Source: Heptranchias perlo
Taxonomy: Eukaryota
Assembly: GCF_035084215.1 (NCBI RefSeq)
Contig: NC_090357.1
Span: 19,034,001 to 19,098,000, forward strand
Direction of reading: 5' to 3'
Length of the DNA: 64,000 nucleotides
Shown here piece after piece: positions 349-62,896 of the stretch. The position numbers and the translations under genes were made by a program. Numbering within the stretch: position 1 is the stretch's first letter; the number at the start of each line of letters is the position of its first letter. The notes below the pieces were generated by a model. That model was not told the DNA's origin, searched no databases, and saw only the letters and a list, made by a program, of their open reading frames with translations.

Positions 349-913
349 CATCTCTTTAATGTGCTTTGCTGTGAGTTTCCTTAGGACAACAATCGAATGT
401 ACAGCCTGGCTGGGGTCCACAGAATTCTCACAACCAGAGGGGGGAAAGAACCTACTCCCCCACCCCCAGTTTCCAGCTACCATAACAGGCCTGAAAGCTT
501 ACAAGACTCATTTCCCTTTGTCTCCTTTTGTAGATAAGGGAGGGAGGAACATGTTTTTGCACCAGCAAAGCGTGCAAATAAGTTGATTTTCAACAAATAT
601 CAAAAGCAGATTGAGTCATTCACTGTTTTGAACTAAATATGATAATAGGCTTAAACCAAGATTGTGAGATTGCAAACTTATATAATTGTGAGAAACAAGG
701 TGTAGCAGAAACATCACTCTCAGATTGTGAAGGCAGAACTTTCCAGCTTTATCTGTGTCACCCACTGCATGCGAGGCCCTGCCAATGATGCTTGGCCTTG
801 GAAGGTTCTGCCCTGGGTCTCAGAATAGGCTACCTTGTAGTAGTAGAAAAATAATCCTCAGTGACATGTAATATATAACACTCTTATATTGAAACAGTTT
901 TATATTTTCTATC

Positions 914-4543: not shown

Positions 4544-7500
4544 TTAATATATGTGAAGGATAGATGAACAAGGAAGTTTGCAGTGGAATAACATTAATAC
4601 CTTGTGCTGTTGGTTGTATAATTGTCGCTTTGGATCATGAATGACAATGTCTGCATAGGACACTTCTTCATCTTCCTCTTCTGCATTGTTGTATTCATTA
4701 ATATAAGCTGATTCTGGGGATAAAAAGAACCATATAAAACAATCATCGCAGTCTTAAGATACGGAAGGGTTTTAAGTCGATGAAGTTTAACTTACTTGCA
4801 GGATTTGGAGTGCTTCGTAGATTCTTTCTCCTGACTTCTGCATATACTGTATCTGCAAATTGTAACAGAGTATCAAAATGAGAGAGGGAGAGAGAGAGAG
4901 ATTAAATTCCAAAACAATTATTTCCCTTCCCCATTTAAGTCTTTTTGCTGCCCTTTTTTAAAATTCATCTGTGCCATAGACAATTCGTCAAATGTTAGAA
5001 ATCAGCTGTTCCCATTCATCTGTCATTGCTGCTTTTCAGCTGGTTGATAAATTGGTAAATGCCACTCACAATCTCAGCAAATGCAAGTTACTCAAACTTC
5101 GCCAAGCTGGAACAAAAACTTGTAGGAGCAATGTTTTCATATAAGTAACACGATAAAAGGATTTGAAATAAGACAAAAGGACAAGACAGAAGGGGAGAAT
5201 TTTCCTCTGTGATCCTGCCCCAAAAATGGATGGGATTGTGGCAGAAATGGTGGGAAAAATGGTTTGTTGAGACTTACTGCTGCCTGATCGTGCCAACCAT
5301 GACCACTGCCTGCTCCTACCCTGTCCTTCGTGTGCAAATGGTGGTGGAGATGGTGGGAAGGGCAAGGACTAGGTCCTGGTCAATTTTCCATCTTTCCTCC
5401 TGTGTTACTGCTGCTTCTCAGGCCAGAAAATAACAGAGCTCTGGAAAGCGATGGTAACTGTCCTGAGGTGCTCCCATGAAGGGAGAGGGCCTTGTAGTGG
5501 CCTCCTCTCCCTCCATTCAGTCCCTAGTGACTTACCTGTTGAAGGCCCTGGTCTCTGCCGAGACCTTCAGAGGGTCTTTGTTTCAGATCTTCGGGGCGTT
5601 CATGCCCCCTTTGACGTCCCTCGTTGGATCTTCTAGTGCGGCAGCTGGAATTGCCTCCTTTGCACTGGAGGGTTCCCTCTTAATGGCGGGAATCTGCTGG
5701 GAGCCGGCCATGCATATTTAAATAGGTCATGGCTGGGATGGATACAGAGTGATGGGGAGATGTCCCACCTCATCAGAACTCCGCCCCAAAGTGGAGAACT
5801 CTTCCCAAAAAGAAAAAGATAACGACCCATGCTGAGGTATTGTTTCATAGGCAGTGGCAGGACTGGTAATTCCTCTAGTGCTCATTCTTAACCATCCTGA
5901 TATTTACAGATTACTCGTCATGTGTTCAACTGGATTTTCAAGTTAAAGGTTCACAGCTGAACCTGAACATTAAGTCAAGGGTAATTGCTCTATTGTTGGG
6001 CTCATAAAAGCTGAGCATGCATTTCTAGCAGTGGTCACTGGATAGTGCTTAGGAGCAGACACCTTGCTGATTCATTTCCTCTCCTTAGTGCAGTAAAGCT
6101 AACACCAGTTGTACATAAGAACATAAGAAATAGGAGCAGGAGTAGGCCATACGGCCCCTCGAGCCTGCTCCACCATTCAATTAAGATCATGGCTTATCTT
6201 TTAACTCAACTCCACTTTCCTGCCCTATCCCCATTTCCCTTGATTCCCTTAGAGTCCAAAAATTTATCGATCCGAGTCTTGAATATATCAACAACTGAGG
6301 GGTAGCATATTCCAAAGATTCACAACCCTCTGAGTAAAGACATTTTTCCTAATCTTGGTGCTAAGTGGCTGACCCCTTATCTTGAGATTATGTGCCCTAG
6401 TTCTAGACTCTCCAGCCAGGGGAAACAGCCTCTCAGCATCCACCCTGTCAAGCCCTCTAAGAATTTTACTTGTTTCAAAGAGATCACCTCTCATTCTTCT
6501 AAACTCCAGAGAAAATAGGCCCATTCTACTCAATTTTTCCTCATAGGACAACCCTCTCATCCCAGGAACCTTCGTTGCACCACCTCTAAGGCAAGTATGC
6601 CTTCCTCAAGTAAGGAGACCAAAACTGTACACAGTACTCCAGGTGTGGTCTCACCAGAGCCCTATATAATTGCAGCAAGACTTCCTTACTCTTATAATCC
6701 AACCCCCTTGCAATAAAGGCTAACATACCATTTGCCTTCCTAATTACTTGCTGTACCTGCATGTTAATTTTCTGTGATTCATATACAAGGACACCCAAAT
6801 CCCTCTGAATACCAACATTTCTTAGTCTCTCACCTTTAAAAAAATATTCTGCTTTTCTATTCTTCCTACCAAAGTGGATAATTTCACATTTCCCCACATT
6901 ATACTCCATCTGCCATCCTCTTGCCCACTCACTTAACCTGTCTATATCTGTTTGCAACCTTTTTGTGTCCTCCACACAGCTTACTTACTTGGATACATTA
7001 CACTCAGTCCCCTCATCTAAGTCACTGATATATATTGTAAACAACTGAGGCCCAAGCACTGATCCTTGTGGCGCACTACTAGTTACAGCCTGCCAACCCA
7101 AAAGTGACCCATTTATTCCTACTCTCTGTTTTCTGTCTGTTAACCAATCCTCAATCCATGCTAATACATCACCCCCAATCCCATGAGCCCTAATCTTATG
7201 TAACAACCTCTTGTGTGGCACCTTATCAAATATCTTTTGAAAATCCACTGGTTCCCCCTTATCTACCCTGCTAGTTACACTCTCAAAAAATTCTTAATAG
7301 ATTTGTCAAACACGATTTCCCTTTCATAAAACTATGTTGACTCTATCTAATCATATTATGATTTTCTAAGTACCCTGTTACTATGTCCTTAATAATAGAT
7401 TCAAGCATTTTCCCTACTACTGATGTCAGGCTAACTGGCCTATAGTTCCCTTATTTTCATTCCCTCCTTTCTTGAATAGCAGGTTTACATTTGCTACCTT

Positions 7501-10500: not shown

Positions 10501-13500
10501 CTTTGGAAGATAACCTATGTAATTGAATAGATGGACATTGCAGAGCTTCCACATGGCATTTCCATAGTTTTGAGAATATATAGCATTATACCATTTTGTT
10601 GCATAGATGCTCCCTTACTGTACTTAATACACAAATATATACAATGTACCTACCCGGCTCACTGTTGCAATTTGCACTCCTGTCCATGGTTTCTGGACTT
10701 GAACAGACAAAATAAAACAAAATTAATGTGATACAAGATCCTAGAGTATTTCAGAACAGAACACTATCAGTTTCGTTCCAGTATCACTGGGTATAAGAAC
10801 TGGACACAGTTGTGGCCAATTTTAGCATATTAATATAACTTACATGATGGTGCATCGCAGCTTCAAGGGCATTTGTAAATCAGATGTTGTGTGGCTTGTA
10901 TTATCTAACCTACTATTGTAATGATGTGACTGGGTAGACTGTGTCGCAAATAAAGGGGACAGCCCTTCCAAGTTCACCTGTGTCTACTTTTTCCACTTAG
11001 ATTAGGTCAAAGCACAGTCATCCGTTTTTGCAAACAAGCATTTAAATATGTAGCATTTTATCATGACTGTGTCACTCCATTTCTGGTTCTATAAATGCAT
11101 CTATATCAAAAACATTTGGAAATAAAATCTCTTCTGAGGGGCTTGGAGCATAAGCGTGATTCCTATTTGTGTCAAGGTGGTACAGGTTATAATTTTAACA
11201 TATCAGCATTGTCAAAATAGAAACCTTTCCACCAGTGTTGAAAAAAATATAATCCTATAGGTCAACCCAGTGGATGATAACAGGGGAGGGGGAATACATT
11301 TAGTCCAATAAAAGATTACTGTTTACACGAGACACGTTTTTAGTTATAATTTCTCTATTAGTGAGTGTATAAAGCATCAGATGTCCTGATGTGTCAGTAC
11401 ATGATAAGAGGCTTGTTAGAGTGTTTATGTGGTTTCTCTATTAGTGAAGGAGTGATAGAAACTGCATGCAATGTAAAGATTGTGGTATATTGTAATGTGC
11501 CATAGTCAATTATCATGACATAGTTGGAATTTCTACAGTTGGAAACAGAGCGGCAAAAGAAGGCACATTAGAGGACATGTGCTTGAAATTTATAGATCTT
11601 TTGGGGAGGCCAGGATCCAGGATACAGTTCCTGCAAAGATGGGTTAAGAAGTGGTAGTATTTGAAGTATGCGAGGCCAAGCTCTCACTTTAGCCCAAAGG
11701 CACCCAGAACCACATTTCTGTCCGACACACCACTCTCATGTCATGTCGGTAGACTCCACAGAAGGCTTGAAGGAAGCAAAGAGAGACAGGTGGACTACCA
11801 GCGAACAGAAAAGAGAGGGAAGTTCAGAGACATATCCTCCAAATTACCAAATGCAGTAATAAGTGGGAAAGTGACCACAAAATCTTTCTTCATCTCTAAC
11901 AATGGTCATCAGTTCCATCCTATCTTGTCAGAATGGAGTGGCTGCAGCAAGACAGGGACAGTTCTACACACTTTCTGGACAGTGATCTGAGGCGCCACAA
12001 AAGCCAACACCTGAATCTCTCAGACTCAGTCACCTGCTTGTTGGCTATCTTTGAAGGCATTGAGGATGCTGTGCAAGATAGTTTTCACTGCAAGCAGCAA
12101 GAAGATGCAACCACACTGTGGTGAAGTACTACACCACAAAAATGCAGGTAAAGGAACTACAGGACATATACCGGTCATAGCAAGTGATATCTGGCTTCCT
12201 CCTAAGACTGAAAAACTATCACATTCCTACGCCTTCCCCCACCCCCGCCCCCCATAAATACTACAGCAGTTCCCTACAGGAGAATTTCCAAGTTGACATG
12301 AGGAGGTGGGAGTGTTTATTCTGACAATCCCAACCACCACAAATCTGGCAAACCAGCCCAACTGCACTGGCAGACAGGATTGGGCAATCCCAGCTACCAC
12401 CACTAACAAAGCACCTTGGCCCTGAAATTCCATGGGCGTTCTCCCACTGTCTCATTGTGACTCTGGCAAGAAACCAATGGAACCCTCAGGGTAATGGCGT
12501 AAATCACCATTTGCAGCCACTTCCCTGGGAGTTGCGCCAGTCTCCTCTCGGAGGTAGGGCAGGAAACCAGGAGAACCTCGACAGAATGTCAGGCCCCTGA
12601 TCCTTAAGCATGTAGCGCTTCTATACTATTCCATCCAGCTTTGCTATACTAATCTATTTAGCACTTATTTTGTGTGTGCCCAAGGCATTTGTGCAACCAT
12701 GCCAGCAGTGTGGGGGCCGGCCTGGGCAAATTTCCAATCTAGGCCCCTCCCCATAATTTGTATGGGCTCCCATGCATGGAAAATGTGCACAGGGAGTCAA
12801 GCTTGGAAAGATGGTTGGAAAAGATCTGCTGCTCACCTTTCGGACGAGTTGAGAAGTGTTGCAGCTGGATGAAGGTGGTGGTACAGCAGACATTCTGAGA
12901 TATATGCAATGATGGTTATGATAATGACTTCTTAGAGTCCTATTGCAGGAGGCACAGAAAAGGAAAGTGGCTTTCTGTGGAGCATTGGTGAGGGTGAATT
13001 TGAAGTTGTGTTGCTGCCACCCAGCAAGTATTTGCTATGATCTTCATAGTGTGACTCCGTTTCAAAATCCTGGTAGCAGAGACTAAGTTTGTTAGTCAGC
13101 TGAATGATGCACTAAAGTTCTATGATCTAACTTGTCTTACAGGCCATTGCTAGGGGGTATGTACATACTGCTTTTATTTTCTTATAGGCTTTTCCTAAGC
13201 TGAGGAGGCCATAGGATGTGGCCATTCAGCCCCAAGCACTGCACTCCCTTTAATACTAGCACTCCAGTGCTTACAATTCATAATTTTGAGGAACATGTCC
13301 CAAGTAAAGCACAATTCACAAGTGAGGAGCAATTAGAAGTGGCAGGAGAGGAAGCTGAAAGATTTTGTAAGGCTGTGAGCAATTTTCCAACCACAAGGGC
13401 AAGGGATTCATATTTGCCGCCTCCTTTGAATCCATCTTGAGCAATCTGCAGCAGCTGTCAGAGAATATGCAACTGTGCACCTCTGACATGATTGTAGTGC

Positions 13501-16500: not shown

Positions 16501-19500
16501 GCAATTTTGTCATAAACTAAAAAACATTCATCTCACTATCATACACATGGAAAACTGGGGACACTGTTCTTTTTAAGAGTTGGGCACTAGATGGGCAACA
16601 TTTGTACCCTAAATCCAAATTTCCTCAATCTTTTATGCCAATTCTGTGAAACATGTGCTGAAACCCTCTGCTGCACATTAAATAACTCTGCCCAAATGAA
16701 TTTCCTGAGGTTATGTCAGTTTTGAATGGCTTAAAATTTACGCCTAAAATATATTTTCTGTATCTATGAATGCATTTTCGTGGCATCAGAGTGGTTTGCA
16801 CTAAAAATTGAAAAACATTCACTTTTGCATTTACTTGCATTTTCTGTGCCTAATGTGCATAAAGGAAGGTTTGACACCTTCAAACATTAACTTTCATGCA
16901 TAAAGAGGGACTTGAAGAAGGAATATGGTTTACGTTTGGTGCTTTCCTCTGGCCCCGATCATTTACGCTGATTTCCACTTGTTTTATGCTGGTTTTTACA
17001 TTCTGGCGTATGCTAATTAGATTCTCAAGCACTTTTGCTTGCCGACAGGAAGATCGGCATAACTTCCCGATTATTCAGGAAATTCCATGTCACTGTGATT
17101 AATCCATCTGGTGGCATGACCAGAATGAGAGAATCATGAGATCTGGTAATAGGACATTGGACACTGCAAATTATATAAGATACTTTCAGATAAGCTGGTA
17201 TTTGCATGGTCTGACCGAATATGAAATAAATGTATCCAATTAAATATATATTATACATTAAGTTGAAACATTCTTTTCCAACATAATTTCCTGTCATGTT
17301 GAAAGCACTAGTCAGCATGAAACTGGCTGCAAAAATGATTAATGACCAAAGTTAACAATGGTTCTCACCTCAGCTCGATGGATACATTAACTGGATCTGG
17401 AGAAAGAAAGAAAAAATACTTTAGAATCAAATGTTTTCTGGTAGGCCCTAACTTCCATATAAGCCTTCTCAGTTCTGATGATGGGATGGTCCACTCCACA
17501 GGTATCAGCAAAAATGGTCTTTTGTTGTTCCAATAAAGTGTATGCTTCATCAGATAGAACAGACATCTTGCCCCTGCCAGTTTTCTATTCCACCCACTGA
17601 TGGTCTGGCCGAGACATATAAAACTCACCAGATAAAACATAGATGAGGAAGACTATTGGTTTATCACAGCCCAATCTACAGTCCTGCATCACAACATCCA
17701 ACCGTTTCTTAAAAGATTCCACTTTCTACCGAAAGACAAAGCATGAATTCAAACTCCCTTCAGTCTCAAGTCTCCCAGATGGGAATACAGCAATAAAACT
17801 CTGTAGGTGTGAGATTGCTCTAGCAATACACTGACCTGCAGTTTCAGAAGAAGCCACAATTTGGTTTCAGTGATGATGAAAGGAGAAACAAAGTGCACAA
17901 AGGATTGGGACAGACAGATAGCACTAGAGTAAGAAATAGTATTGTGTTAGGTGGGATCAGACTAAGAGAGAATACAAGAAGGTCTACGATAGGTTTTCAA
18001 TGCATGTGTGTAAACACACGAAGTAGTAAACAAGTTTGGTGAGCTGCAGGCACAAATAGCCACATGGGAATATGATGTTGTGGCGATAACACAGACCTGG
18101 CTCAAAAAAGGGCAGGATTTGGTACTAAATATTCCTAGATACAAGATGTTCAGGAAAGATAAAGAAGGAAAGAAAGGAGGGGGATGGCAGTATTGATTAA
18201 GGAGAATATTGCAGTGCTGGAGAGAGAGGATGTCCTGTCAAGGACAGAATCTATTTGGTTAGAGTTAAGAAACAATAGGGGTGCCATTACACTACTGGGT
18301 GTATTCTATAGGCCACCAACTAATGGGAAGGATATAGAAGAGCAAATTTGCAGGGAAATTAGAGAGAGGTGCAAGGGCCGTAGAGTAGTGATAATGGGGG
18401 ACTTCAGCTCACCACCACCGTCTCAAGGGCAATTAGGGATGGGCAATAAATGCCGGCGTCGCCAGTGACGCACACATCCCATCAACGAATTAAAAAAACT
18501 TCAACTATCCTAATGTAGACTAGGATAGTAATAATACAAAGGGCAAAGAGGGGCAGGAATTTTTGAAGTGTGTTCCGGAGAACTTTCTTGACCAGTACGT
18601 TTCCAGCCCAACGAGGAAGGAGGCAATGCTGGATCTGGTTCTGGGGAATGAGGTGGGCCAGGTGCAGCAAGTGTCAGTGGGGGATTATTTAGGGAACAGC
18701 GATCAAAAAAGGGTGTAAGGATAAACCTAGCAACTGCAGGCCAGTCAATTTAACCTCAGTGGTGGGGAAACTTTTAGAAACGATAAGCCAGGACAAAGTT
18801 AATAATCACTTGGACAAGTGTGGATTAATTAAGGAAAGCCAGCATGGATTTGTTAAAGGCAAATCGTGTTTAACTAACTTGATTGAGTTTTTTGATGAGC
18901 TAACAGAGAGGGTCGATGAGAGCAATGCAGTTGATGTAGTGTACATGGACTTCCAAAAGGCATGTGATAAAGTCCGGCGTAATAGGCTTGTAATCAAAGT
19001 TGAAGCCCATGGAGTAAAAGAAGCAGTGGCAGCATGGATACAAAACTAGCTAAGTGACCATAAACAGAGAGTAATAGTGAAGGGTTGTTTTTCAGACTGG
19101 AGGGAGGTGTGCAGTCGTATTCCCCAGGGGTCGTTACTAGGACCACTGCTTTTCTTGATATACATTAATGACTTGGACTTGGGTATACAGGGCACTAATT
19201 CCAAATTTGCTGATGACACAAAACTTGGAAGTGTAGTGAACAGTGAGGAGAATAATGATAGGCTTCAAGAAGACATAGACAGGCTGATGGAATGGGCAGA
19301 CACGTGGCAGATGAAATTTAACGCAGAAAAGTGCAAAGTGATGCATTTTGGTAGGAAGAATGAGGAGAGGAAATAAAGGTTACAATTCTAAAAGGGGTGC
19401 AGGAACAGAGCGATCTGGGGGTATATGTGCACAAATCTTTGAAGGTGGCAGGGCAGGTTGAGAAAGCAGTTACAAAAGCATACGGGGTCCTGGGCTTTAT

Positions 19501-49500: not shown

Positions 49501-52500
49501 CATACGGCCCCTCGAGCCTGCTCTGCCATTCAATAAGATCATGGCTCATCTTCAACCTCTACTCCACTTTCCCAACCGATCCCCATATCCCTTGATACCC
49601 CTAGAGTCCAAAAATCTATCTATCTCAGCCTTGAACATATTCAACAACTCAGCATCCGCAGTCCTCTGGGGTAGAGAATTCCAAAGATTCACAACCCTCT
49701 GAGTGAAGAAATTCCTCCTCATCTCAGTCTTAAATGGCTGACCCCTTATCGTGAGACTATGCCCCCTAGTTCTAAACTCTCCAGCCAGGGGAAACAACTT
49801 CTCAGCATCTACCCTGTCAAGCCCCCTCAGAATCTTGTATGTTTCAATGAGATCACCTCTCATTCTTCTAAACACCAGAGAGTACAGGCCCATTCTACTC
49901 AATCTCTCCTCATAGGACAACCCTCTCATCCCAGGAATCAATTTAGTGAACCTTTGTTGCACCACCTCTAATACCCTTCCTATAATTGAGTGCCCAAATA
50001 TGCACATAATACTCCAACTTCAGCCTAACCCAGATAATGAAGCAGTCCGTGCCCGCATGCAGCACGACCTGGACAACATCCAGGCTTGGGCTGATAAGTG
50101 GCAAGTAACATTCGTGCCCCACAAGTGCCAGGCAATGACCATCTCCAACAAGAGAGCATCTAACCACCTCCCCTTGATATTCAACAGCATTACCATCGCC
50201 AAATCCCCACCATCGACATCCTGGGGGTCACTATTGACCACTTAACTGGACCAGCCACATAAATACTGTGGCTACAAGAGCAGGTCAGAGGCTGGGTATT
50301 CTATGGCGAATGACTCACCTCTTTTTCTAATCTATTCCTCCAGATCTAAAACCAAGGATTCTGTTTACAGTTCTTTGGCCTTATCTACTTGCAGTTTAAA
50401 TTACTGTATCTGCACACCAAGGTCGCTCTGCTCCTTTAATTTAAAATATTACCATAGAAAGACTCTATTTTCAATTCCAAATGTACTAACTCATATTTTT
50501 CTGCATTGCATCTGCCAACTATGCGCCAATCCTATTAGTCTACTTTTGTCTTCTGCAGTGTTTCACAATCCTCATCACAATTTCCCATATCTTCCAATTT
50601 CATGTCATCAGCCAATTTTGATATTGTTTCCTCAATTCCTAAGTCCAGGTCTTCTACGTAATTCGTAAATAATAGTGACTCTGTACAGATCACTATGGAA
50701 CACCATTCACCAAACCTTTCCATTCCAAGAAACTGCCTTTTACCACTACTCTTTGCTTTCTGCTCTCCAACCATCTTTCTATTCCTGTAGCCAATTATAT
50801 GTGCCATTGCCTTTACCATAAAGCTCTATATAGCAGCTTAACAAATGCTTTTTGAAAATCCACATAACCTGCACCCACTGCAATTTATTTTATCTATCCT
50901 CTCCGTTATTTGTCAAAGAATTCTATTAGCTGGGTCAAGCACAACCTGCCTTTAAAAAATCTGTGTTGACTGGCCCTGTAATCCAGTGTTATAGTTTCTA
51001 GTAGTTTATTAACAACTGAAATAAGAGTAACTGGCCTCTAATTTCCTGGTTTGTCTCCTTTTTCGAAGAGGGGTATCACATTTTTCACCTTCCAGTCAGC
51101 TGGCACAATTTTCTTTACCAATGAGTTTTAATAAATTATATTCAGAGCCTTTGCTATTTCTTCCCCAGGTGTAAACCACCAGGTCCCTGTGATTTGTTTC
51201 CCTTTAGTTTGAGTATGTTCTTCAGTACCATTTCTAGTTGAATACTGGAGAGTATTAGAGATAGAAATATTGGAGTACAGTTACTTTTAACTCCTGTATC
51301 CTAATCTATCCATGACTGTTAAACATTTGAAAGGATGCCATTCAGTAACTAATAGAAAATGTTGATCACATATTTGCTGCAAAAATAATATTATAATTTT
51401 GTCTTTATCAAAAACCCAATATATTAGTTAATTTTCTGGTATAGCATACCTAGTATGACATCCAGAACACAAGTGATAAAATTCAAAATGTTTAAAACGA
51501 TCTCATATAATGCCCTGGCTTGGTATGAACAGCCTCTATAACAGAAAACGAGATTGGGACATGAAAATAAGCCAACATACAAGAAAACTTACAAATACAT
51601 TATTGCAAAGGACTGTATAATCACACCAGCAAGTGAAAACCACATCATTTTACAGCTCGCTATTGATGTCAATGGCAAGATTAACACCTACAACCAATGA
51701 TTTATTTTAGGTTTTACCTTTCAACTGCTTCTTCCAGATCAGACAAAAGTGTATTGTCACCACAGCAATGAATCCACAGACAGCAATGAGTGGAGCTAGA
51801 ACAAAAGGCCACCAATGATCTGTGAAAGAGATAATAAACAATAATAAAATCACAATTAATGACAACAGTTACCATACCTCAACAATTGGTAATGCTTGGA
51901 GATATTTCTAAGAGATGTGAAAAGTTGCTATATTTTTTAATTTTTCTTTGACAACTGTAAAACTATTTTCTTCAGATTCCAAAGAAAGTTTTATGCCTGA
52001 TGTACACTGCAGTTAATAGATAAAATTCCAGCATTTTTATTTCCCATTTTCTTTACTCAACATTATAAAGCACTGGCGTTATGGTTAAAAACAAGTGGTG
52101 TCAAATCATGGACAAATGTGCTATAAGTTGTAAGTGGCTAAACACTGGCAATGTTTTGGGAACTGTATATGTTATTTACTACACAAGTTTATTTTAAAAT
52201 AGAACAAATATTACCATCCATTTACGTCTGAGACCAGGAGAGAAGATGATTGAAACAATTAATCTATGCTCCCATCTTGTAGAAGTGATTCTACTGCAAC
52301 AGACATTGTGATCTTTACACATGCATTATTACATTTCTATTTACCTTTCTGTTCAACTTTTATCCAAACACTTGCGTTTCCCCAGCCGTAGCTGTTGTTT
52401 GCCGTACACCAGTAGACTCCTCCGTCTTCAGACTGGAAATTTATTAACTTTACTTTTGAACTATTCAACCCAGCTGCACTTGGTAACACCTGAGTGTGGT

Positions 52501-55500
52501 TTCTCCCGTCCTTCACCCAGATCACAGAGGATGCTGGATTACTTTCCACAGTGCATCTCAGTTCCAGGGATGAATCAGGAGGGACAGTGATAGAGTTACT
52601 GGTCACAGGATGGTAACTGCCTGTATTGTTGAACCTGTACATTATTGTGGGATCTTGTGGCCCATCTATCAGTAAAGATAATGTATACTTAATTTTACAT
52701 AGAAACAATATGAAAATACACAAGTAGATACGGTCTAGCTAGTCAACAACAACAACAACTTGCATTTATATGGCGCCTTTAACATAGAAAAACATCCCAA
52801 AGCACTTCACAGGAGTGTAATCAGACAAAAATTGACTCTGAGCCAAAGAAGGAGATATTAGGGCAGGCGACTAAAAGCTTACTCAAAGAGGTATGTTTTT
52901 AGGAGCATCTTAAAGGAGGAGAGAGAGGTGGACAGGTGGAGATGTTTAGGGAATTCCAGAGCTTAGGGCCTAGATGGCTGAAAGCAATGAAGATGGGTGC
53001 TGTACCTAATGGAACAACCAGAGTGGGAAAGAGTACTGGGGGCAAGGGCATCAAAGTTGAAGGTGAGGGTGTGACTGAGCAGATCTATAACTGCAGAAGT
53101 ATTGTGGCAAAAGGACAGTCAAAGGCAAGACAGTTGGGAGTTTGAAATTGCCGTTGTAAATGTCTTGGGGGAAAGTTTTTTCAAGGAGTGGATGCAGAAG
53201 GAAATGGGGATGGAAGGGGGAAGGAGGATGTGAGTGGTGAGGGGTACAAGGAAGTGATCAGAGATGGCCTTGTCTGTAATTGAGATTGGGAATAGAGAAG
53301 CCACATGAGGTGGCAAGGTTGAGAGGGTGGCAGTAAATATGGGTAGATTGAGAGGGCAACAGTGAACTCAGGAGAGAGGGCAGGGTGAGTTGAGATGGAG
53401 GTTGAAATCACCGAGGATGAGAAGTCGCTCGGTGCAAAGGCTGAGGGAGGAAATCTCTGTGAGAAACTTAGGGTGGGGCTTTGGTGGGTGATAGAGATTG
53501 ATGATTTTAAAGGAGAGGCAAGAGGGGTGGTACAAGTTGAGGTGCTAAAGGAGGAGAAGGTACCAAAGGTGTATGGTGAGATATGGTGATAGGGGCCACA
53601 GTTTGAGCAAGGCGGTTGGTGGAAGGTATAGCCAGGCGGGGAGGCTTCAATAAAGTGTCATCACCTGTGAACCAAGTTTCCATCAAGGCCATAAGGTCCA
53701 TGCAATCATCCACAATAAGGTCATGGATGGCAAGGGCTGTGTTTGCAACTGAACAGACATTTTGGAGGGAGATGTGGAGAGGGGCAGTGATTATTGATCT
53801 GCTAGCACAGTCCACAAGGTCAGTGGTGGGAGGGGTGAGTAGGTCAGGAAGGAAGTTGGCAGAATTAGCCCCCAATGGGTGCGCTGGGTGGGAAGGTCGT
53901 CAAGAGAGGAGGGTGGGGCAGTTGGGATTGCTGCTGATATGGAGGCAGTGACAAGTGCTTTGATGGGCCCTCCACAGAATGGCAAGAGAGGCACAGAGGA
54001 AAGCTGTGGGCTTATCTAAGAAGGAGTCAAGCCTGGGAGAGCAGCAGATGAGTAGCAAGGTAGAGGAATAGTGAAGGGTTGGTGTAGAGATTTGGACGGA
54101 CAAAGTACCCAAGAAGAGGTATGACTAAGTAATCAGAGGGGGAGGAGACAGAAGAGAAGACCCCAAGAGGGGTAAAGAGATGAGAAAGAACATGAGAGAT
54201 AGAAGTAATGGGCTCGGGTCCGGAATGGCAGCCCAAATGGACACAGAGGAAATTCAGGTTTCAAAGGCATGGCAAAGATTAAGATAGATATGTTCTGATT
54301 GTAAACGGAGAATAGGAAAGAAACAATAAGATAGAGTCCAAAGTCAGAATCTTTAGCATTACAGAGAATAGTACTAAGTATTTAAAATGTTACAGAGAAT
54401 ACTCACACATAACATGTAGTATGATCTCGTTTATTACTGGCTGTCTGAAAGTCACATGATTGATCTGACATCTACAGACAGATCCATGATTTCTCACTTT
54501 AGGGACGATCTCAAGTTGGTTGGTGACAACAGATGTACCATCACCAGTTCTTTTTATGGACAGTGTAGTGACGTTTGTGGAGATGTTTGTTCCACGGCAT
54601 GCCCAGGTAAAGGAAATATTCTCAAAGGACAACCCCTTGGCAGAGCAGGTCAGCTTGGACTTACGTCCAGCAATCAAAGCACCATCTACAATAGAAACAT
54701 CAGGAGGTTCTGCGGGAGAGGACAAAATACAATATATGAAACTATAAAGAACATCTACTCTGTGAATGAGATTTATTAACATCATCTCATTGAATTTAAT
54801 GACAACCTTATTAGAGATTCTAATTGCCACTGTTCTGAAATGTATTGAGTATCATAATGTAAAATCATTTATAGCTGAACGAATAGTTAATTCTAAATTT
54901 AAGTATACTTTGCCATACTTCCATGCAGAACCCTTTAGTTTGGTAAAATAGAGACATATTGGTAGTTAAAGTAGCCTTTCTAGTAGATCAAAAGAATCGA
55001 GAAACAAAAAATACTGAGTGTACCAGTATCACTCTGGATCGCTGCTCAATCAGGATCTTCTATTGGGATTTCTCAATCATCTGATCAAAGTGACTCATGT
55101 ACAATACTCTTACATCTACATTACCTACAAGGTGGCATCAATGTCACACTAAGACAGTTTAATAGTGGATGAATGGTAGCAGAAGCTGGTCCTATATGAG
55201 TGTATGTTGATCAGTATATATTGGGATTTTTCTCTGTGACTAAAAATGAGAGAAGCCAAGTCCATATAAGGTACTTTACCATTGAGTGTGCTGAATACTG
55301 CAGATGGTGAATTTCTGTCACCTTTTGTTACAATGCTTCATGTTTACCCTGGGAACAGTTATTTTGTATTACATTCCCTCAGATGTGACATCCTGTAGTT
55401 CTGCTCCAGTGACATCAACAACGGGCACAGACGGTGGAATTTCTAAAGCCTTGAGCAAAAAACGGAGCCTGTTGCAGTGAGCAGCTTATCGAGAAACTGC

Positions 55501-61500: not shown

Positions 61501-62896
61501 ACAATTAGCTTAAATAAGCTGGTTCTATATTGGATGTGCTTGTTAATAGTGTATGTTTCCGTAAATGGTTTGGTACAAAAGTTGTTGCGTCCATAATTAA
61601 TACACACTCAGTCCGTATACTGTAGATCTATAAAAAGTCACTGTCGTTCTACTTATTACAAGATATGCAAATACTTTACCATAAATCTGTATCCGTGTTC
61701 CTTGTCCTTTTCTCTCTAACGGCGGGTAGACTATCGGTACCTTCACCACACAGACCGAACTATAATTAGAGTGACCATAAGAAACATTTTCAATCTTCAG
61801 TGATGCAACACAGCGGCTAAAGCCACCCTGAGCAACGTCAGGAATGCAAGTCGGTTTATTCTCTTCATAGTGAATAGTAGGGAATCCTGGAGATCTCGTG
61901 TACCAGGCTGTACGGACCCAGTCACTATCATTTCCACGATAATTAAATGTACAGTTTATAATGACTGACTCTCCTCTCAGGACACTGACCAGACACGGCT
62001 GCAACACAGTCTCAACAAGCGGGAAACCTGATGGAATAAAATAAGTTTGTCATTTTCAGTTTGGGTCCAGTTAGTAATTCTTTTAACATAAATGGGAAAC
62101 GTCAAAAACTAAATTTAAACAATGCTGAATTTTAAATATTGTTTCTATTGGATCTGATATAAATAACTGTTAAAATATTTGTATTCTTTTCCAGCTTTAA
62201 TTCTAAACTATGTGACAGTTTGAGATCTGATATTCTGCAGTAATGTTCTTTTACTATGTTGAATTTGGAGATGCCGGTGATGGACTGGGGTTGACAATTG
62301 TAAACAATTTTACAACACCAAGTTATAGTCCAGCAATTTTATTTTATTTTTAGCTTGTGAATTTAAAATAAAATTGCTGGACTATAACTTGGTGTTGTAA
62401 AATTGTTTACAATATGTTGAATTTGTTGTTTTCTATATAAACCGTCCCAGACTGATCAGGATGTTGCCACAAGATCTTGTTTCCAGTTCTGTGAACTCGA
62501 TGGTATCATTGAGCACTGTTCAATGAATGACCCACTTTTACTCAAGCTCCACACAACTTTAAATAATCCGACCCTTGTCGCAGTGTAAAGATTCACAATC
62601 AATAAATACTCAAATTATTACCTCAACCTAAATGTAAGTTATGGAGAGGAGACTGAACCCAACCAACGTGATGTGGGGCTTTGAACAATAATCTTAAAGT
62701 GTCCAAATGACACGGCTCTTTCTAACTTAGACTCTCTCTGCAGTTACACAGTCACAGAAAAATGCTGAAGTATTTTAAAAGGGGAATAGGATGCCTCTAA
62801 AATCCATATCCTAGCTCTACGTTAATTTACCGATCAGAGTGACTTACCTCGAACTCCTGTTTGTAAAATCAAAAACAGCTTCAGCAAGAGTTGCAT
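4544..62896 (-). CDS. Multi-exon gene: type I IgSF receptor (SP-V-C1/C2-I-TM-ITSM/ITIM tail), putative inhibitory immune receptor; 3' end uncertain
   Basis: Nine exons joined by GT..AG introns with consistent phases (62848-62896, 61680-62027, 54407-54709, 52345-52665, 51718-51819, 17369-17396, 10654-10697, 4796-4852, 4601-4713) give a stop-free 455-codon frame; read-through of the last donor adds 18 aa to TAA at 4544-4546. One Ig domain per phase-1 exon is the standard IgSF layout. Confidence 0.85.
4601..4713 (-). CDS. Exon 9: cytoplasmic exon with YxN sites and ITIM-like VSYADI
   Basis: 82-nt intron, acceptor ttctttttatccccag; [38 protein letters not shown]; then either donor AAG|GTATTA to an unseen exon or read-through to TAA at 4544. 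Confidence 0.78.
4796..4852 (-). CDS. Exon 8: cytoplasmic exon with ITSM ([19 protein letters not shown])
   Basis: (CT)n upstream, acceptor tttgcag, donor A|GTAAGT, 57 nt, phase 1-1; TVYAEV fits ITSM consensus TxYxx(V/I). Confidence 0.8.
5860..8480 (-). mobile_element. Old LF-SINE-like element split by a CR1 insertion (halves about 5860-6112 and 8374-8480)
   Basis: cccagctgagaacagccaattca at 8387 is the degenerate reverse complement of tgagttagctgatct seen at 36433; boundaries approximate. Confidence 0.4.
6113..8373 (-). mobile_element. CR1 LINE (family A), 5'-truncated, decayed
   Basis: RT fragments [46 protein letters not shown]; (CATAAGAA)n tail at 6113. Confidence 0.92.
9885..10378 (-). 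mobile_element. CR1 3' fragment (distinct subfamily)
   Basis: ORF2 C-terminus [27 protein letters not shown]; cataggaacgtaggaa tail. Confidence 0.75.
10654..10697 (-). CDS. Exon 7 (putative 44-nt cytoplasmic exon, [15 protein letters not shown])
   Basis: T-rich tract ttttgttttattttgtctgttcaag (AAG acceptor, less common), donor CGG|GTAGGT; phase 2 to 1 restores frame into the ITSM exon. Confidence 0.6.
12415..14800. mobile_element. Highly decayed PIF/Harbinger transposon
   Basis: Minus-strand [22 protein letters not shown] (14190-14396) resembles the Harbinger transposase C-terminal CxxLHN motif; plus-strand remnant near 12825-12880 resembles the Myb/SANT gene start; ggccctgaaattcc terminus-like sequence at 12418. 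Boundaries approximate. Confidence 0.5.
15650..16080 (-). mobile_element. Old CR1 3' fragment
   Basis: Degenerate ORF2 end and 3'UTR ([24 protein letters not shown]). Confidence 0.7.
17369..17396 (-). CDS. Exon 6 (putative 28-nt cytoplasmic micro-exon, DPVNVSIEL)
   Basis: Very strong acceptor tttttctttctttctccag and donor GAG|GTGAGA; phase 1 to 2, complemented exactly by the 44-nt exon at 10654-10697. Confidence 0.65.
17880..20130 (+). mobile_element. CR1 LINE (family C), internally deleted
   Basis: Endonuclease remnant ([14 protein letters not shown]), jump near 18705, RT ([30 protein letters not shown]), (TTCTATGA)n tail. Confidence 0.92.
18407..18497 (+). mobile_element. LINE family B 3' tail inserted in CR1
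   Basis: Reverse complement of the family B 3' end with A-tail; 6-bp direct repeat ACTTCA at 18401-18406 and 18498-18503; removal restores CR1 GDFNYP. Confidence 0.8.
20718..21160 (+). mobile_element. tRNA-headed Deu-domain SINE (SacSINE1-like), decayed
   Basis: gctcagttggtag..gggttcaa head, gtta aagatcccatggcactattt..aagaagag core, L2-like tail; homologous to 23394-23830. Confidence 0.7.
21765..21935 (+). mobile_element. CR1 family C 3' end fragment
   Basis: Matches 19960-20130 including (ATTCTATG)n tail. Confidence 0.8.
22877..22981. mobile_element. Foldback MITE (Harbinger-like termini)
   Basis: Imperfect palindrome over its whole 105 bp (GGGGCCGAAATTCCTTGG versus reverse complement GGTCCTGAATTTCCTCGG); TTT on both flanks. 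Confidence 0.65.
23394..23830 (+). mobile_element. tRNA-headed Deu-domain SINE (SacSINE1-like)
   Basis: A box tggctcagagg, B box ggttcaagttc, core ctgtctttcagatgaaatgttaaac..caggtggatgtaaaaga, tail ggctgtaaagcgttttgggacatcctgaggtc. Confidence 0.8.
25435..25865 (+). mobile_element. tRNA-headed Deu-domain SINE, decayed
   Basis: Collinear similarity to 23394-23830. Confidence 0.7.
29560..30060 (+). mobile_element. LF-SINE-like element interrupted by a Deu-SINE/L2 tail (about 29850-29965, minus)
   Basis: tagctgatctc motif and body similar to 36350-36725; insert matches 63600-63710. Confidence 0.45.
30098..30443 (+). mobile_element. tRNA-headed SINE sharing head and tail with LINE family B
   Basis: aaaaacccaactggttccctaatgtccttcagggaagggaacctgcc matches the reverse complement of 58355-58402; tail gcaataaatctggtcttgccagcattgtccatatccca matches the family B 3' end. 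Confidence 0.75.
30687..30748. repeat. Two-copy tandem duplication (30-bp unit, period 32)
   Basis: CTTTGCCTTGCATCCGTTTCATTCACAGAC at 30687-30716 and 30719-30748. Confidence 0.9.
32187..34845 (-). mobile_element. CR1 LINE (family C), decayed, hosting a nested CR1
   Basis: RT fragments [30 protein letters not shown]; 3'UTR split at 32262/32913. Confidence 0.9.
32263..32912 (-). mobile_element. CR1 family A 3' fragment nested in family C 3'UTR
   Basis: (CATAGAAA)n tail; [29 protein letters not shown]; ATCCA repeated at both junctions (32258-32262, 32913-32917). Confidence 0.88.
35310..35445. mobile_element. MITE with about 40-bp TIRs
   Basis: GTGAAATTGGACATGGG(TG/CA)GAGACACAAAACAGG inverted at the two ends; CAA on both flanks. 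Confidence 0.8.
36350..36725 (+). mobile_element. LF-SINE-like element
   Basis: tctgtgctgagttagctgatct motif, recalled from LF-SINE consensus; needs RepeatMasker confirmation. Confidence 0.5.
38091..38203. mobile_element. Harbinger-type MITE
   Basis: TIRs GGGGTAGAAAT / ATTCCTACCCC, 3-bp flanking duplication ATT, CpG-rich interior. Confidence 0.7.
41821..43622 (+). pseudogene. Harbinger Myb/SANT-like DNA-binding protein gene, 3 exons, frameshifted
   Basis: [24 protein letters not shown] / [29 protein letters not shown] (frameshift near 41900), donor GTGAGT at 42060, exon 2 with RTGGGPP (about 42352-42508), acceptor ttctcttgcag at 42625, second frameshift near 43175, basic C-terminus [10 protein letters not shown]. 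Confidence 0.8.
43810..44175 (-). pseudogene. Harbinger transposase N-terminal remnant, catalytic DDE region absent
   Basis: [18 protein letters not shown] joined to [33 protein letters not shown] (HARBI1-type helix-turn-helix region); no DGT/GDxGY motifs follow. Confidence 0.75.
46454..46829 (+). repeat. Local duplication copy 1 (of 48831-49222)
   Basis: About 375 bp collinear with 48831-49222, roughly 90% identical by eye. Confidence 0.92.
47612..48529. repeat. 24-bp minisatellite (CAGACACTCCCAGCTCTGTGCCAT)n, about 38 copies
   Basis: Head-to-tail units with 23-bp and substitution variants; degenerate units also at 46897-46995; explains the 8-aa repeat ORFs. Confidence 0.97.
48831..49222 (+). 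repeat. Local duplication copy 2 (of 46454-46829)
   Basis: Same sequence; here it continues into an old CR1 3' remnant to about 49460. Confidence 0.92.
49461..49975 (-). mobile_element. CR1 family A 3' fragment
   Basis: (CATAAGAA)n tail; [34 protein letters not shown]. Confidence 0.92.
50025..50322 (+). mobile_element. LINE family B internal fragment
   Basis: [27 protein letters not shown], as in ORF 55942..56649. Confidence 0.88.
50325..51240 (-). mobile_element. Old CR1 RT remnant
   Basis: [19 protein letters not shown]; degenerate VDFQKAF region near 50850. Confidence 0.7.
51718..51819 (-). CDS. Exon 5: transmembrane segment [34 protein letters not shown]
   Basis: Acceptor ctctttcacag, donor G|GTAAAA, 102 nt, phase 1-1; long hydrophobic run then WKK stop-transfer. 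Too short for the ORF track. Confidence 0.9.
52345..52665 (-). CDS. Exon 4: Ig I/C2-set domain
   Basis: Acceptor tctttactgatag, donor G|GTAAAT, 321 nt, phase 1-1. (Y)GP start, [29 protein letters not shown]. Confidence 0.93.
52745..54240 (-). mobile_element. L2-type LINE, internally deleted
   Basis: (CAA)n tail with L2-like 3' end, endonuclease remnant [27 protein letters not shown]; purine-rich plus strand. Confidence 0.75.
54407..54709 (-). CDS. Exon 3: Ig constant-type (C1/C2-like) domain
   Basis: Acceptor tcctctcccgcag, donor T|GTGAGT, 303 nt, phase 1-1. [21 protein letters not shown] (C-x-x-x-H of C1-like domains). Confidence 0.92.
55433..55627. mobile_element. Decayed MITE
   Basis: GGTGGAATTTCTAAAGCC versus reverse complement GGGTAGAATTTTCCAAGGCC; central CATTAATATCAATG near-palindrome. 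Confidence 0.5.
55776..58564 (-). mobile_element. LINE family B with intact 5' end (tRNA-like head, single EN-RT ORF, decayed)
   Basis: Head 58564-58495 with A box TAGCATAGTGG and B box GTTCAAATAC; ORF from 58310 runs into APE endonuclease ([20 protein letters not shown]) then RT (MFADD); about 470 bp missing at 55941; A-tail at 55776. Confidence 0.9.
59372..60453 (-). mobile_element. L2-type LINE 3' part
   Basis: [37 protein letters not shown]; 3' end matches 52745-52980. Confidence 0.85.
61680..62027 (-). CDS. Exon 2: Ig V-set domain with J-like GQGT motif
   Basis: Acceptor ttttattccatcag, donor G|GTAAAG, 348 nt, phase 1-1. VIINCTF (B-strand Cys), AWY (C-strand Trp), SLKIENV (E strand), [24 protein letters not shown] (F-G); overlaps track ORF 61597..62007. 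Confidence 0.92.
62268..62412. mobile_element. Penelope-derived inverted-repeat insertion with 13-bp TSD
   Basis: 50-bp perfect inverted repeat (62297-62346 / 62364-62413); flanking direct repeat TATGTTGAATTTG (62255-62267, 62413-62425). Confidence 0.85.
62848..62896 (-). CDS. Exon 1: signal peptide [16 protein letters not shown](G)
   Basis: ATG at 62896, 49 nt, hydrophobic core, strong phase-1 donor GAG|GTAAGT; joins the V exon in frame (G+GT=Gly). Confidence 0.85.

What the first reader, a model, noticed from the sequence alone, without database searches (positions are those of the whole stretch)
4544..62896. Unassigned three-Ig-domain immune receptor with ITSM plus ITIM tail
Seen: nine phase-compatible exons spell an uninterrupted SP-V-C1/C2-I-TM-tail protein, with 12 N-x-S/T sequons in the ectodomain and no Lys/Arg in the TM core. 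Established: ITSM/ITIM pairs recruit SHP-1/SHP-2 (PD-1, BTLA, Siglecs, SIRP-alpha), and ITSMs can bind SAP-family adaptors. Inference: a checkpoint-like receptor of cartilaginous fish whose domain mix matches no family I recognise (CD28 family has one V; SIRP is V-C1-C1; nectins lack such a tail). Six of the nine exons are not represented as their own ORFs in the track.
Basis: partly seen in the sequence, partly recalled or inferred. Interest (0 to 1): 0.85.

Follow-up and report, generated by a model that had tools for sequence, protein, structure and literature searches.

The report
Shark inhibitory VJ-C1-I immune receptor
This is a real, transcribed sevengill-shark gene for a cell-surface receptor with three antibody-like domains and an inhibitory-type tail; databases call it a "Siglec", which its sequence does not support, and it belongs to an old, unstudied receptor family.

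Summary
Nine minus-strand exons (62896 to 4601) encode signal peptide, a one-exon VJ-type V domain, a C1-set domain, an I-set domain, a TM segment and a tyrosine-motif tail. Their translations occur, 100% and in order, in a public 498-aa protein of Heptranchias perlo, auto-named "sialic acid-binding Ig-like lectin 14". Spliced RNA contigs show V>C1>I>TM>exon 6>exon 7, so the distant tail exons are joined to the TM exon.

One correction: exon 9 most likely ends at 4601. A tenth coding exon, outside the window, adds a third motif (SEYSVV).

Relatives were found in 17 elasmobranch species, with weaker ones in coelacanth, paddlefish and sturgeon. No tetrapod orthologue turned up. A short-tailed paralogue with Arg in its TM lies on the same contig, which suggests a paired inhibitory/activating system.

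The Siglec name fails: no conserved Arg in V, a canonical V with a J motif, and a C1-set second domain. SIRP fails on domain 3.

Seven full-text searches found no paper describing the family. The scan earlier noted other VJ-C1 paired-receptor clusters on other pieces of this genome; I did not test whether they are kin.

Signalling is inferred, and the ligand is unknown.

The parts
62848..62896 (-). Exon 1, coding part: ATG at 62896-62894, signal peptide [16 protein letters not shown], donor G|GTAAGT, phase 1
   Evidence: Sequence read. Translation equals P0034 residues 1-16.
61680..62027 (-). Exon 2: single-exon VJ-type V domain (348 nt, phase 1/1). It has the Cys-Trp-Cys core, an extra invariant Cys pair, a YPP loop and the J-like GQGTRIQIY.
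   Evidence: V-set 22.3 bits, below the cut-off of 26; the best PDB matches listed are antibody V domains, mostly lambda light chains; P0034 18-132; the loose end at 54710 equals the 3' end of this exon.
54407..54709 (-). Exon 3: C1-set domain (303 nt, phase 1/1), with the CRCQINH motif
   Evidence: C1-set 33.6 bits against a cut-off of 21; IgM C-mu and UrIg2 are the top matches; contig piece 54407-54710, 0 mismatches; joint to 52665 in X1, X2 and X3.
52345..52665 (-). Exon 4: I-set domain (321 nt, phase 1/1)
   Evidence: Ig_3 49.7 bits, I-set 41.5 bits; joint 52345>51819 in all 4 runs.
51718..51819 (-). Exon 5: transmembrane segment plus KKQLK stop-transfer (102 nt, phase 1/1). No K or R in the core.
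   Evidence: contig piece 51718-51819; the loose end beyond 51718 runs into exon 6.
17369..17396 (-). Exon 6: 28 nt encoding PVNVSIEL (phase 1 in, phase 2 out)
   Evidence: The reverse complement of the X1 loose end at 51718 equals these 28 nt plus the first two letters of exon 7.
10654..10697 (-). Exon 7: 44 nt encoding (S)[14 protein letters not shown] (phase 2 in, phase 1 out)
   Evidence: (100% to P0034 384-398).
4796..4852 (-). Exon 8: 57 nt encoding [18 protein letters not shown], the ITSM-form motif (Tyr 402 of P0034)
   Evidence: (P0034 400-417).
4601..4713 (-). Exon 9: 113 nt encoding [37 protein letters not shown]. It carries two YxN sites and the ITIM VSYADI (Tyr 437), and ends in phase 0 at the donor AAG|GTATTA.
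   Evidence: (P0034 419-455).
4544..4600 (-). It is most likely the start of intron 9, not coding.
   Evidence: P0034 continues after residue 455 with 43 residues that are not encoded anywhere in the window. The same C-terminal exon is conserved in 16 of 18 long-tailed relatives. No RNA was laid on this stretch.

Best explanation
The window holds the first nine of ten coding exons of an expressed Heptranchias perlo gene. It encodes a type I membrane glycoprotein with this layout: signal peptide, a non-rearranging one-exon VJ-type V domain, a C1-set domain, an I-set domain, an uncharged TM segment, and a roughly 120-residue tail. The tail has three conserved tyrosine motifs: T/I-x-Y-A-x-V, V-S-Y-A-D-I and S-E-Y-S-x-V.

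Most likely it is the inhibitory member of a paired receptor family. Its partner on the same contig has the same three domains, an Arg in the TM and no tail.

Inferred mechanism: the V domain, probably through its conserved YPP-containing FG loop, binds an unknown ligand. Src-type kinases then phosphorylate the tail tyrosines. The ITIM-type motifs recruit SHP-1/SHP-2-type phosphatases, and the TxYxxV form perhaps recruits SAP-type adaptors, which damps activating signals. The Arg-TM partner would couple to an ITAM adaptor.

Shown here: the gene structure, its transcription and splicing, the domain types, and motif conservation. Inferred: the ligand, phosphorylation, phosphatase recruitment and the cell type.

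The family is its own lineage. It is antigen-receptor/SIRP-like in V-C1 and Siglec/MAG-like in the membrane-proximal domain and in tail style. It is not a Siglec, and it is not SIRP as those families are defined.
For: Gene and transcript:
- Seven exons occur as exact substrings of P0034, in order; exon 7 matches at 100% by tblastn and exon 6 by tblastn and by eye.
- A 2800-nt RNA contig of run X1 carries C1, I and TM with 0 mismatches, joined at GT..AG borders. Its loose ends run into the V exon and into exon 6 plus exon 7.
- The same joints appear in X2 and X3. The I>TM joint also appears in a roughly 4% divergent contig of another organism, X4.

Domains:
- Pfam gives C1-set and I-set/Ig_3 above their cut-offs.
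- The V exon matches lambda light-chain V domains through the J motif. The C1 exon matches IgM C-mu and UrIg2.
- The family profile aligns V-C1 contiguously with a light-chain-like V-C chain (49.5 bits). Whole-chain scores are UrIg2 97 bits and SIRP-alpha 82 bits.

Tail (25 family proteins examined, some of them isoforms of one gene):
- 18 have long tails.
- Motif 2 (VS/PYADI) is in 18 of 18.
- Motif 1 is in 17 of 18, with T at -2 in 12 and I in 5.
- Motif 3 is in 16 of 18.
- The coelacanth protein keeps motifs 2 and 3.

Pairing:
- P0042 is from the same species and the same 33.7-Mb contig. It has Arg in its TM and no tail, and is 60/85/75% identical in V/C1/I.
- Arg-TM short forms also exist in Pristiophorus, coelacanth and paddlefish.

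Family range: 17 elasmobranch proteins at E<=1e-88, and a 16-row elasmobranch clade with 100/99 support.
Against: - There is no functional, ligand or tissue information. The run records are coded and only guessed to be RNA, although the splicing shows they are.
- The junctions 7>8, 8>9 and 9>10 rest on the public model and on conservation, not on RNA I laid.
- The ITSM threonine is not conserved: it is Ile in 5 of 17.
- The two Heptranchias genes are only 60% identical in V. This is much less than I recall for classical pairs such as SIRP-alpha/beta, so they need not share a ligand.
- I could not verify the partner's position.
- A language-model feature search of the whale-shark orthologue puts MAG-like, Siglec and CD22 clusters nearest, at 0.96-0.97.
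- The C1+I part of the profile aligns with MAG domains 2-3 at 54.5 bits.
Confidence: 0.7

Rival explanations
1. It is a true Siglec: a sialic-acid-binding lectin homologous to the CD33-related Siglecs or MAG, as the database names say.
For: - Automatic names of the gene and its relatives are Siglec-5/8/12/13/14, MAG-like and sialoadhesin-like.
- The nearest named clusters in the Atlas feature search are MAG-like, Siglec and CD22, at 0.96-0.97.
- The C1+I part of the profile aligns with MAG domains 2-3 (54.5 bits, E 6e-14), and Siglec-8 scores 83 bits.
- The tail style, a proximal ITIM plus a distal S/TEYSxV, and Arg-TM partners resemble my recollection of the Siglec-5/14 pair.
Against: - Reviews define a Siglec by a conserved V-domain Arg that ligates sialic acid (PMC8161119, passages read). 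No Arg column in the V region is invariant in the 16-sequence alignment. The best is 13 of 16 at an N-terminal position; near the F-G loop the best are 9 and 8 of 16.
- The V part of the profile aligns with the MAG V domain at only 8.4 bits, i-Evalue 5.5.
- None of the best 60 PDB matches listed for the V exon is a Siglec. All are antibody V domains, and the match runs through the J motif.
- Domain 2 is C1-set (33.6 bits, above cut-off). C2-set_2 falls below its cut-off.
- The V domain keeps the canonical NCTF...Y.C cysteines.
Confidence: 0.1
2. It is the fish orthologue, or a co-orthologue, of the SIRP family, with SIRP-alpha-like inhibitory and SIRP-beta-like activating members. The third domain would have drifted or been replaced.
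For: - SIRP-alpha (2wng) aligns over profile positions 21-221, the V-C1 part, and scores 82 bits as a whole chain. SIRP-gamma scores 72 bits.
- V has a J motif and domain 2 is C1-set, as in SIRP (PMC12975943, passages read).
- The family pairs ITIM-tailed and positively charged-TM members.
- The paddlefish relative is auto-named SIRP-alpha-like.
- The xxYADI and SEYSxV motifs resemble SIRP-alpha tail motifs as I recall them.
Against: - SIRP is defined as V plus two C1-set domains. Here domain 3 is I-set/Ig_3, and C1-set is not among its 9 Pfam matches at E<=1.
- Antibody chains and UrIg2 score as high as SIRP-alpha or higher on V-C1.
- No tetrapod member was found in three word-limited searches or in one exhaustive V-exon search.
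Confidence: 0.12
3. It is mainly a cell-adhesion molecule of the nectin/CADM/MAG kind rather than an immune receptor. The tyrosine motifs would serve adhesion signalling.
For: - Nectins and CADMs, as I recall, share the V, C1-like and I/C2 layout.
- The sturgeon relative is auto-named cell adhesion molecule 2-like.
- The I-set exon matches neural adhesion molecules best: DSCAM, contactins, neurofascin and MAG.
Against: - No nectin, PVR or CADM chain is among the best 60 PDB matches listed for any exon or for the profile.
- The family has Arg-TM, tail-less partners and three ITIM/ITSM-type motifs. That is the signature of paired immune receptors.
- The sturgeon protein is only 26% identical and sits on a long branch.
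Confidence: 0.06
4. The model is an artefact: the exons at 4.6-17 kb belong to another transcript and are not joined to the Ig and TM exons.
For: The intron between the TM exon and exon 6 is 34 kb and full of repeats. All-phase-1 exons can be joined by chance.
Against: - The X1 contig runs from the TM exon straight into the 28 nt of exon 6 and on into exon 7.
- The tblastn of the three Ig, the TM and two tail exon translations found no second copy of any of them in the window.
- The same exon order is seen in the public protein models of relatives listed.
Confidence: 0.02

Closest known systems
SIRP family (SIRP-alpha inhibitory, SIRP-beta activating)
   Same: It has an N-terminal V domain with a J-like motif followed by a C1-set domain. 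The inhibitory member has an ITIM-type tail. A partner has a positive charge in its TM. SIRP-alpha aligns across the V-C1 part and scores 82 bits as a whole chain. The SIRP features come from PMC12975943, passages read.
   Different: The third domain is I-set, not C1-set. The tail has three motifs in the order ITSM-like, ITIM, ITIM. The two Heptranchias genes are only 60% identical in V. No orthology or synteny was shown, and the ligand is unknown.
CD33-related Siglecs and MAG (for example the Siglec-5/Siglec-14 pair, recalled)
   Same: The database names point here. The membrane-proximal I/C2-type domain and the VxY(G/P)P domain border align with MAG domains 2-3. The family also has an ITIM plus a distal S/T-E-Y-S-x-V motif and Arg-TM partners.
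   Different: There is no conserved sialic-acid-ligating Arg. V is a canonical VJ domain that matches antibody V domains rather than Siglec V. Domain 2 is C1-set.
Non-rearranging antigen-receptor-like genes UrIg and UrIg2 of elasmobranchs, and Ig/TCR chains
   Same: A one-exon VJ domain is followed directly by a C1 domain. UrIg2 (9dmx) is the third-best PDB match of the C1 exon and scores 97 bits against the family profile.
   Different: UrIg2 is a VJ domain plus nine C1 domains plus TM, and UrIg has no TM (PMC12227049: abstract and passages; the UrIg feature is partly recalled). Those passages mention no I-set domain, ITIM tail or paired partner. The paper does not contain the words SIRP, siglec or inhibitory.
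Teleost NITRs and the PRARP genes (features recalled; PRARP seen only as a name in PMC10751288 and PMC11599192)
   Same: Both are non-rearranging VJ-type V domains on membrane receptors with ITIM tails or charged TMs. They are viewed as relatives of the antigen-receptor precursor.
   Different: As I recall, NITRs are V or V-I, and PRARPs are V-C2 or V only. Neither has the C1-set second domain. No sequence comparison was made here.

Membership tests
Siglec | [quoted passage not shown] | tested here: not met
   In the 16-sequence alignment no V-region column is invariant Arg. The best is 13 of 16 near the N-terminus; the F-G region has 9 and 8 of 16. The MAG V domain aligns at only 8.4 bits, i-Evalue 5.5.
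Siglec | All domains after V are C2-set (recalled) | tested here: not met
   Exon 3 scores C1-set 33.6 bits (cut-off 21) and C2-set_2 19.5 bits (cut-off 21). Its best PDB matches are IgM C-mu, UrIg2 and IgG/IgE constant domains.
Siglec | Unusual V-domain cysteines: a B-E disulphide, no F-strand Cys, and an inter-domain disulphide (recalled) | tested here: inconclusive
   The family has invariant Cys at NCTF and at Y.C, plus an invariant extra pair.
Siglec | Binds sialylated glycans | not testable with these tools
   This needs a glycan array with recombinant protein.
SIRP | Ectodomain of one V-set and two C1-set domains (PMC12975943, passages) | tested here: not met
   Domains 1 and 2 fit. Domain 3 is Ig_3/I-set, and C1-set is not among its 9 Pfam matches at E<=1.
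SIRP | An ITIM tail on the inhibitory member, and a positively charged TM on the activating member | tested here: met
   VSYADI and SEYSVV are in P0034. P0042 and P0043 have Arg in the TM and no tail. This is at motif level only; binding was not tested.
SIRP | Orthology by synteny, and CD47 binding | not tested
Non-rearranging VJ-C1 antigen-receptor-like genes (the UrIg kind) | V and J encoded in one uninterrupted exon, followed by a C1 domain | tested here: met
   Exon 62027-61680 runs from the A strand through GQGTRIQIY without interruption. The match to lambda V domains runs through the J motif. The next exon is C1-set.
Non-rearranging VJ-C1 antigen-receptor-like genes (the UrIg kind) | UrIg/UrIg2 architecture: C1 domains only after V, either secreted or VJ plus nine C1 plus TM | tested here: not met
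   Here the layout is V-C1-I-TM with a tyrosine-motif tail. The UrIg2 description comes from PMC12227049.
   There are three Ig exons. Only the YPP-containing FG loop is reminiscent, with P119/P120 nearly invariant or invariant.
Nectin/PVR/CADM | Sequence kinship of the V-C1-like-C2 ectodomain | tested here: inconclusive
   None is among the best 60 PDB matches listed for any exon or the profile. Lower ranks were not seen.
ITIM-bearing inhibitory IgSF receptors (functional class) | A type I membrane protein with (I/V/L/S)xYxx(I/V/L) in the cytoplasmic tail | tested here: met
   It has a signal peptide, a TM segment, and the motifs at Tyr 402, 437 and 488 of P0034. The motifs are conserved across relatives.

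The most novel reading that the evidence does not exclude
The family is a surviving membrane-bound branch of the pre-RAG antigen-receptor stock. On this reading, a one-exon VJ-C1 unit of the same kind that gave rise to Ig, TCR and UrIg was already working as a paired inhibitory/activating signalling receptor in the first jawed vertebrates. It would then have been kept in elasmobranchs, coelacanth and chondrosteans and lost, or changed beyond recognition, in teleosts and tetrapods. The Siglec/CEACAM-style tail and membrane-proximal domain would be ancestral features shared with those families, not convergence.
Probability: 0.15. Interest if true: 0.8.

Novelty: new variant of a known kind. Interest (0 to 1): 0.55.

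Why it matters
One-exon VJ genes are sought as relics of the gene that the RAG transposon split to create rearranging antigen receptors (PMC12227049, introduction passage). This gene joins such a VJ-C1 unit to a signalling receptor with a conserved three-tyrosine tail and an Arg-TM partner. It is conserved from sharks and rays to coelacanth.

If studied, it could show what a VJ-C1 receptor did before or beside rearrangement. It would also add an inhibitory/activating receptor pair to the few known in cartilaginous fish.

Practically, it shows that the names Siglec-5/8/12/13/14 and MAG-like on these shark and ray proteins should not be read as evidence for CD33-type Siglecs in these animals.

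Tried and rejected
- Other gene copies in the window. A tblastn of the three Ig, the TM and two tail exon translations against the window found only the exons themselves, so the tail cannot belong to a second copy here.
- The tenth exon in the window. The last 43 residues of P0034 gave no credible match (best E 0.36, 27.6% over 29 residues). It therefore lies beyond the window start.
- My first TM scan, with strict criteria, missed the TM exon. A hydropathy scan found it.
- CEACAM. I considered it because of the ITIM/ITSM tail and the VxYGP domain border. A paper says CEACAMs exist in cartilaginous fish (PMC5112662, passages). No CEACAM is among the best 60 PDB matches listed, and the V domain here keeps the canonical cysteines. 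I rejected it as a family, without a direct comparison.
- Tetrapod orthologues. The exhaustive V-exon search gave 27 hits. Beyond the family these are weak (E 5e-8 to 8e-4) and go to reptile lambda chains, a turtle CD22-like protein and teleost MAG-like or FcR-like proteins. Searches with P0001, with profile A1 and with coelacanth P0030 found none. These three are word-limited and length-limited, so absence is not proven.
- Literature. Seven full-text searches (and, within papers) found no description of a V-C1-I ITIM receptor family of sharks. UrIg 2023 (J Immunol) is not held. I searched for the Ohta 2019 paper only by a title phrase and it was not among the results. PRARP (Fu 2019) I never looked up. 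I saw none of the three, and supplements are closed, so the family could be mentioned there.
- Synteny and structure could not be done. The look-up of encoding contigs and structure prediction were closed, so no fold search was run.
- The tree used 21 rows. I left out P0001, P0003 and P0039 (isoforms or older models of genes already included), P0005, P0046, P0009 and P0014 (fragments), and P0047-P0053 (weak hits). Three rows have long branches, so the deep order is unsure.
Full report
WHAT IS THERE

The window (64,000 bases, no N) carries one multi-exon gene on the minus strand. ORF listing and Pfam showed three Ig exons:
- A V-set exon, 22.3 bits, below the cut-off of 26.
- A C1-set exon, 33.6 bits against a cut-off of 21.
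- An Ig_3/I-set exon, 49.7 and 41.5 bits.

A hydropathy scan found a TM exon just downstream of the I-set exon, at 51.8 kb. A motif scan found TVYAEV and VSYADI at 4.6-4.9 kb.

Reading the DNA gave AG/GT borders and phases:
- exon 1: 62896-62848
- V: 62027-61680
- C1: 54709-54407
- I: 52665-52345
- TM: 51819-51718
- exon 6: 17396-17369
- exon 7: 10697-10654
- exon 8: 4852-4796
- exon 9: 4713-4601

All junctions are phase 1 except 6>7, which is phase 2, and the end of exon 9, which is phase 0. The total is 1365 nt, or 455 codons. The three Ig exons hold 12 N-x-S/T sequons, and the TM core has no Lys or Arg.

IDENTITY

I searched exon by exon. I left out the joined step, meaning any search or fold with a spliced model of my own.

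The V exon (115 aa) was scored against 1.84 billion representative proteins. It gave only 27 hits at E<=1e-3, six of them close at 49-59% identity. All six are elasmobranch proteins.

A search with the closest hit, P0001, returned 16 proteins. One is P0034, 498 aa, "sialic acid-binding Ig-like lectin 14 [Heptranchias perlo]". The whole-codon translation of seven of my exons (1-5, 8 and 9) is an exact substring of P0034, in order, with one residue between neighbours for each split codon. Exon 7 matched at 100% by tblastn, and exon 6 by tblastn and by eye. The window is therefore sevengill-shark DNA, and the gene is already a public predicted protein.

P0034 goes on after residue 455 with 43 residues ending in TSEYSVVRQDLKTA. 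Nothing in the window encodes them (best tblastn E 0.36). The tenth coding exon lies beyond the window start.

RNA

Four public runs held 6-21% of the sampled words of 51700-54720, a stretch that is 24% exon. Laid on 50800-54800, their contigs cover the exons and skip the introns exactly at my borders.

- A 2800-nt contig of X1 carries C1 (54407-54710), I (52345-52665) and TM (51718-51819) with no mismatch.
- The joint 54407>52665 is in X1, X2 and X3. The joint 52345>51819 is in all four runs.
- The 30-letter loose end beyond 51718 is, in reverse complement, the 28 nt of exon 6 followed by the first two letters of exon 7.
- The loose end beyond 54710 is the 3' end of the V exon.

X4 comes from another organism and differs at 14 of 327 laid letters, but it shows the same I>TM joint. 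They rest on P0034 and on conservation.

THE FAMILY

A profile of 16 relatives (alignment A1, without P0034) found 24 proteins at E<=1e-8:
- 17 are elasmobranch proteins at E<=1e-88.
- One is a coelacanth protein at 7e-32.
- Six are weak hits: five teleost proteins and one unnamed run-assembly protein.

Over, relatives come from 17 shark and ray species. More distant members with the same V-C1-I layout exist in coelacanth, paddlefish and sturgeon. No chimaera or tetrapod member was seen, but three of the four searches are word- and length-limited.

In a tree of 21 rows, the elasmobranch proteins form one clade (100/99) whose subclades follow taxonomy. This looks like one conserved gene per species, plus local duplicates.

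I examined 25 family proteins, some of which are isoforms of one gene:
- 18 have long tails.
- VS/PYADI is in 18 of those 18.
- The first motif is in 17, as TxYAxV in 12 and IxYAxV in 5.
- The C-terminal SEYSxV-type motif is in 16. The two Heterodontus isoforms have another end.
- The other seven are short. Four or five have an Arg in or at the edge of the TM: Heptranchias P0042, Pristiophorus P0043, coelacanth P0007, paddlefish P0032 and perhaps P0002.

P0042 is on the same 33.7-Mb contig as P0034. It is 60%, 85% and 75% identical to the window's V, C1 and I exons. An earlier, unchecked scan note places such a gene about 8 kb beyond the window end. The two squalomorph Arg-TM forms group together (90/90). 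The coelacanth long and short forms are 92% identical.

WHAT IT IS LIKE

By sequence the ectodomain is a mosaic.

- The V exon matches antibody V domains, mostly lambda light chains, through the J motif. All 60 best PDB matches listed are antibody V domains.
- The C1 exon matches IgM C-mu, UrIg2, IgE and IgG constant domains and IgNAR.
- The profile aligns V-C1 contiguously with a light-chain-like V-C chain (49.5 bits). Whole-chain scores are 97 bits for UrIg2 and 82 bits for SIRP-alpha.
- The I-set exon matches DSCAM, titin, contactins and MAG.
- The C1+I part aligns with MAG domains 2-3, including the VxY(G/P)P border (54.5 bits).
- A language-model feature search of the whale-shark orthologue lists MAG-like, Siglec and CD22 clusters first, at 0.96-0.97.

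The Siglec name fails on the defining feature. No Arg is conserved in the V domain (the feature is from PMC8161119). The V domain does not align with the MAG V domain (8.4 bits). Domain 2 is C1-set.

SIRP, defined as V-C1-C1 (PMC12975943), fails on domain 3. UrIg2 is a VJ domain plus nine C1 domains plus TM (PMC12227049). CD28-family members have one V domain. I therefore file the gene under no named family. I describe it as a non-rearranging VJ-C1-I paired receptor.

HOW IT PROBABLY WORKS

This part is inferred from established knowledge of ITIM and ITSM receptors. Ligand binding by the V domain would lead to phosphorylation of Tyr 402, 437 and 488. The spacing between them is 35 and 51 residues. 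The ITIM-type motifs would recruit SHP-1/SHP-2-type phosphatases, and the TxYxxV form perhaps SAP-type adaptors. The two YxN sites of this species could bind Grb2.

The Arg-TM partner would signal through an ITAM adaptor. The invariant PP in the FG loop just before the GxG bulge is a candidate ligand-contact loop. None of this was tested.

NOVELTY

The sequence is public, but I found no paper on the family in seven full-text searches and five in-paper searches. Three relevant papers were not seen: UrIg 2023 is not held, Ohta 2019 was sought only by a title phrase, and Fu 2019 was never looked up. Supplements are closed. The scan has noted other VJ-C1 paired-receptor clusters on other pieces of this genome; I did not test whether they are kin.

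It is a new domain arrangement of a known kind of system, paired ITIM/charged-TM IgSF receptors. Its particular interest is that it carries a one-exon VJ-C1 unit.

Noticed in passing
window 47609-48529: A 24-nt tandem array of 38.5 copies with 94% matches. It is open in several frames on both strands and lies inside the 34-kb intron between the TM exon and exon 6.
   Followed up: partly
window 52676-53077: An intronic repeat between the C1 and I exons. RNA-contig word depth there is about 800 to 18,800 in all four runs, against 7-115 on the gene's exons, and there are many loose ends. It looks like an expressed repeat family.
   Followed up: no
window 55942-58310 (-), 40710-41342 (+), 1698-2516 (-): LINE fragments fill the introns. 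Pfam gives RVT_1 at 4.8e-30 and 6.5e-13, and an endonuclease domain at 6.6e-10. The 1698-2516 ORF looks like reverse transcriptase by eye only.
   Followed up: partly
window 41682-42419 (+): An ORF with a Myb/SANT-like DNA-binding domain (PF13873, 3.4e-5) in the most GC-rich part of the window (0.496). It may be a transposon-derived gene or a remnant.
   Followed up: no
P0030 and P0007 (Latimeria), not in the window: The coelacanth has an ITIM-tailed form and a short form with Arg in the TM that are 92% identical. They are either a very recent pair or isoforms of one gene.
   Followed up: no
P0001 and P0033 (Heterodontus), not in the window: One horn-shark isoform lacks the I-set domain, which corresponds to phase 1/1 exon skipping. 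Both isoforms have a different C-terminal end without the SEYSxV motif.
   Followed up: no
V exon 62027-61680 and C1 exon 54709-54407: Besides the canonical pairs, the family has an invariant extra Cys pair in V (16 of 16 at both positions). It also has a near-invariant extra pair in C1, the WxC and the first Cys of CxCQINH, at 13 and 15 of 16.
   Followed up: partly
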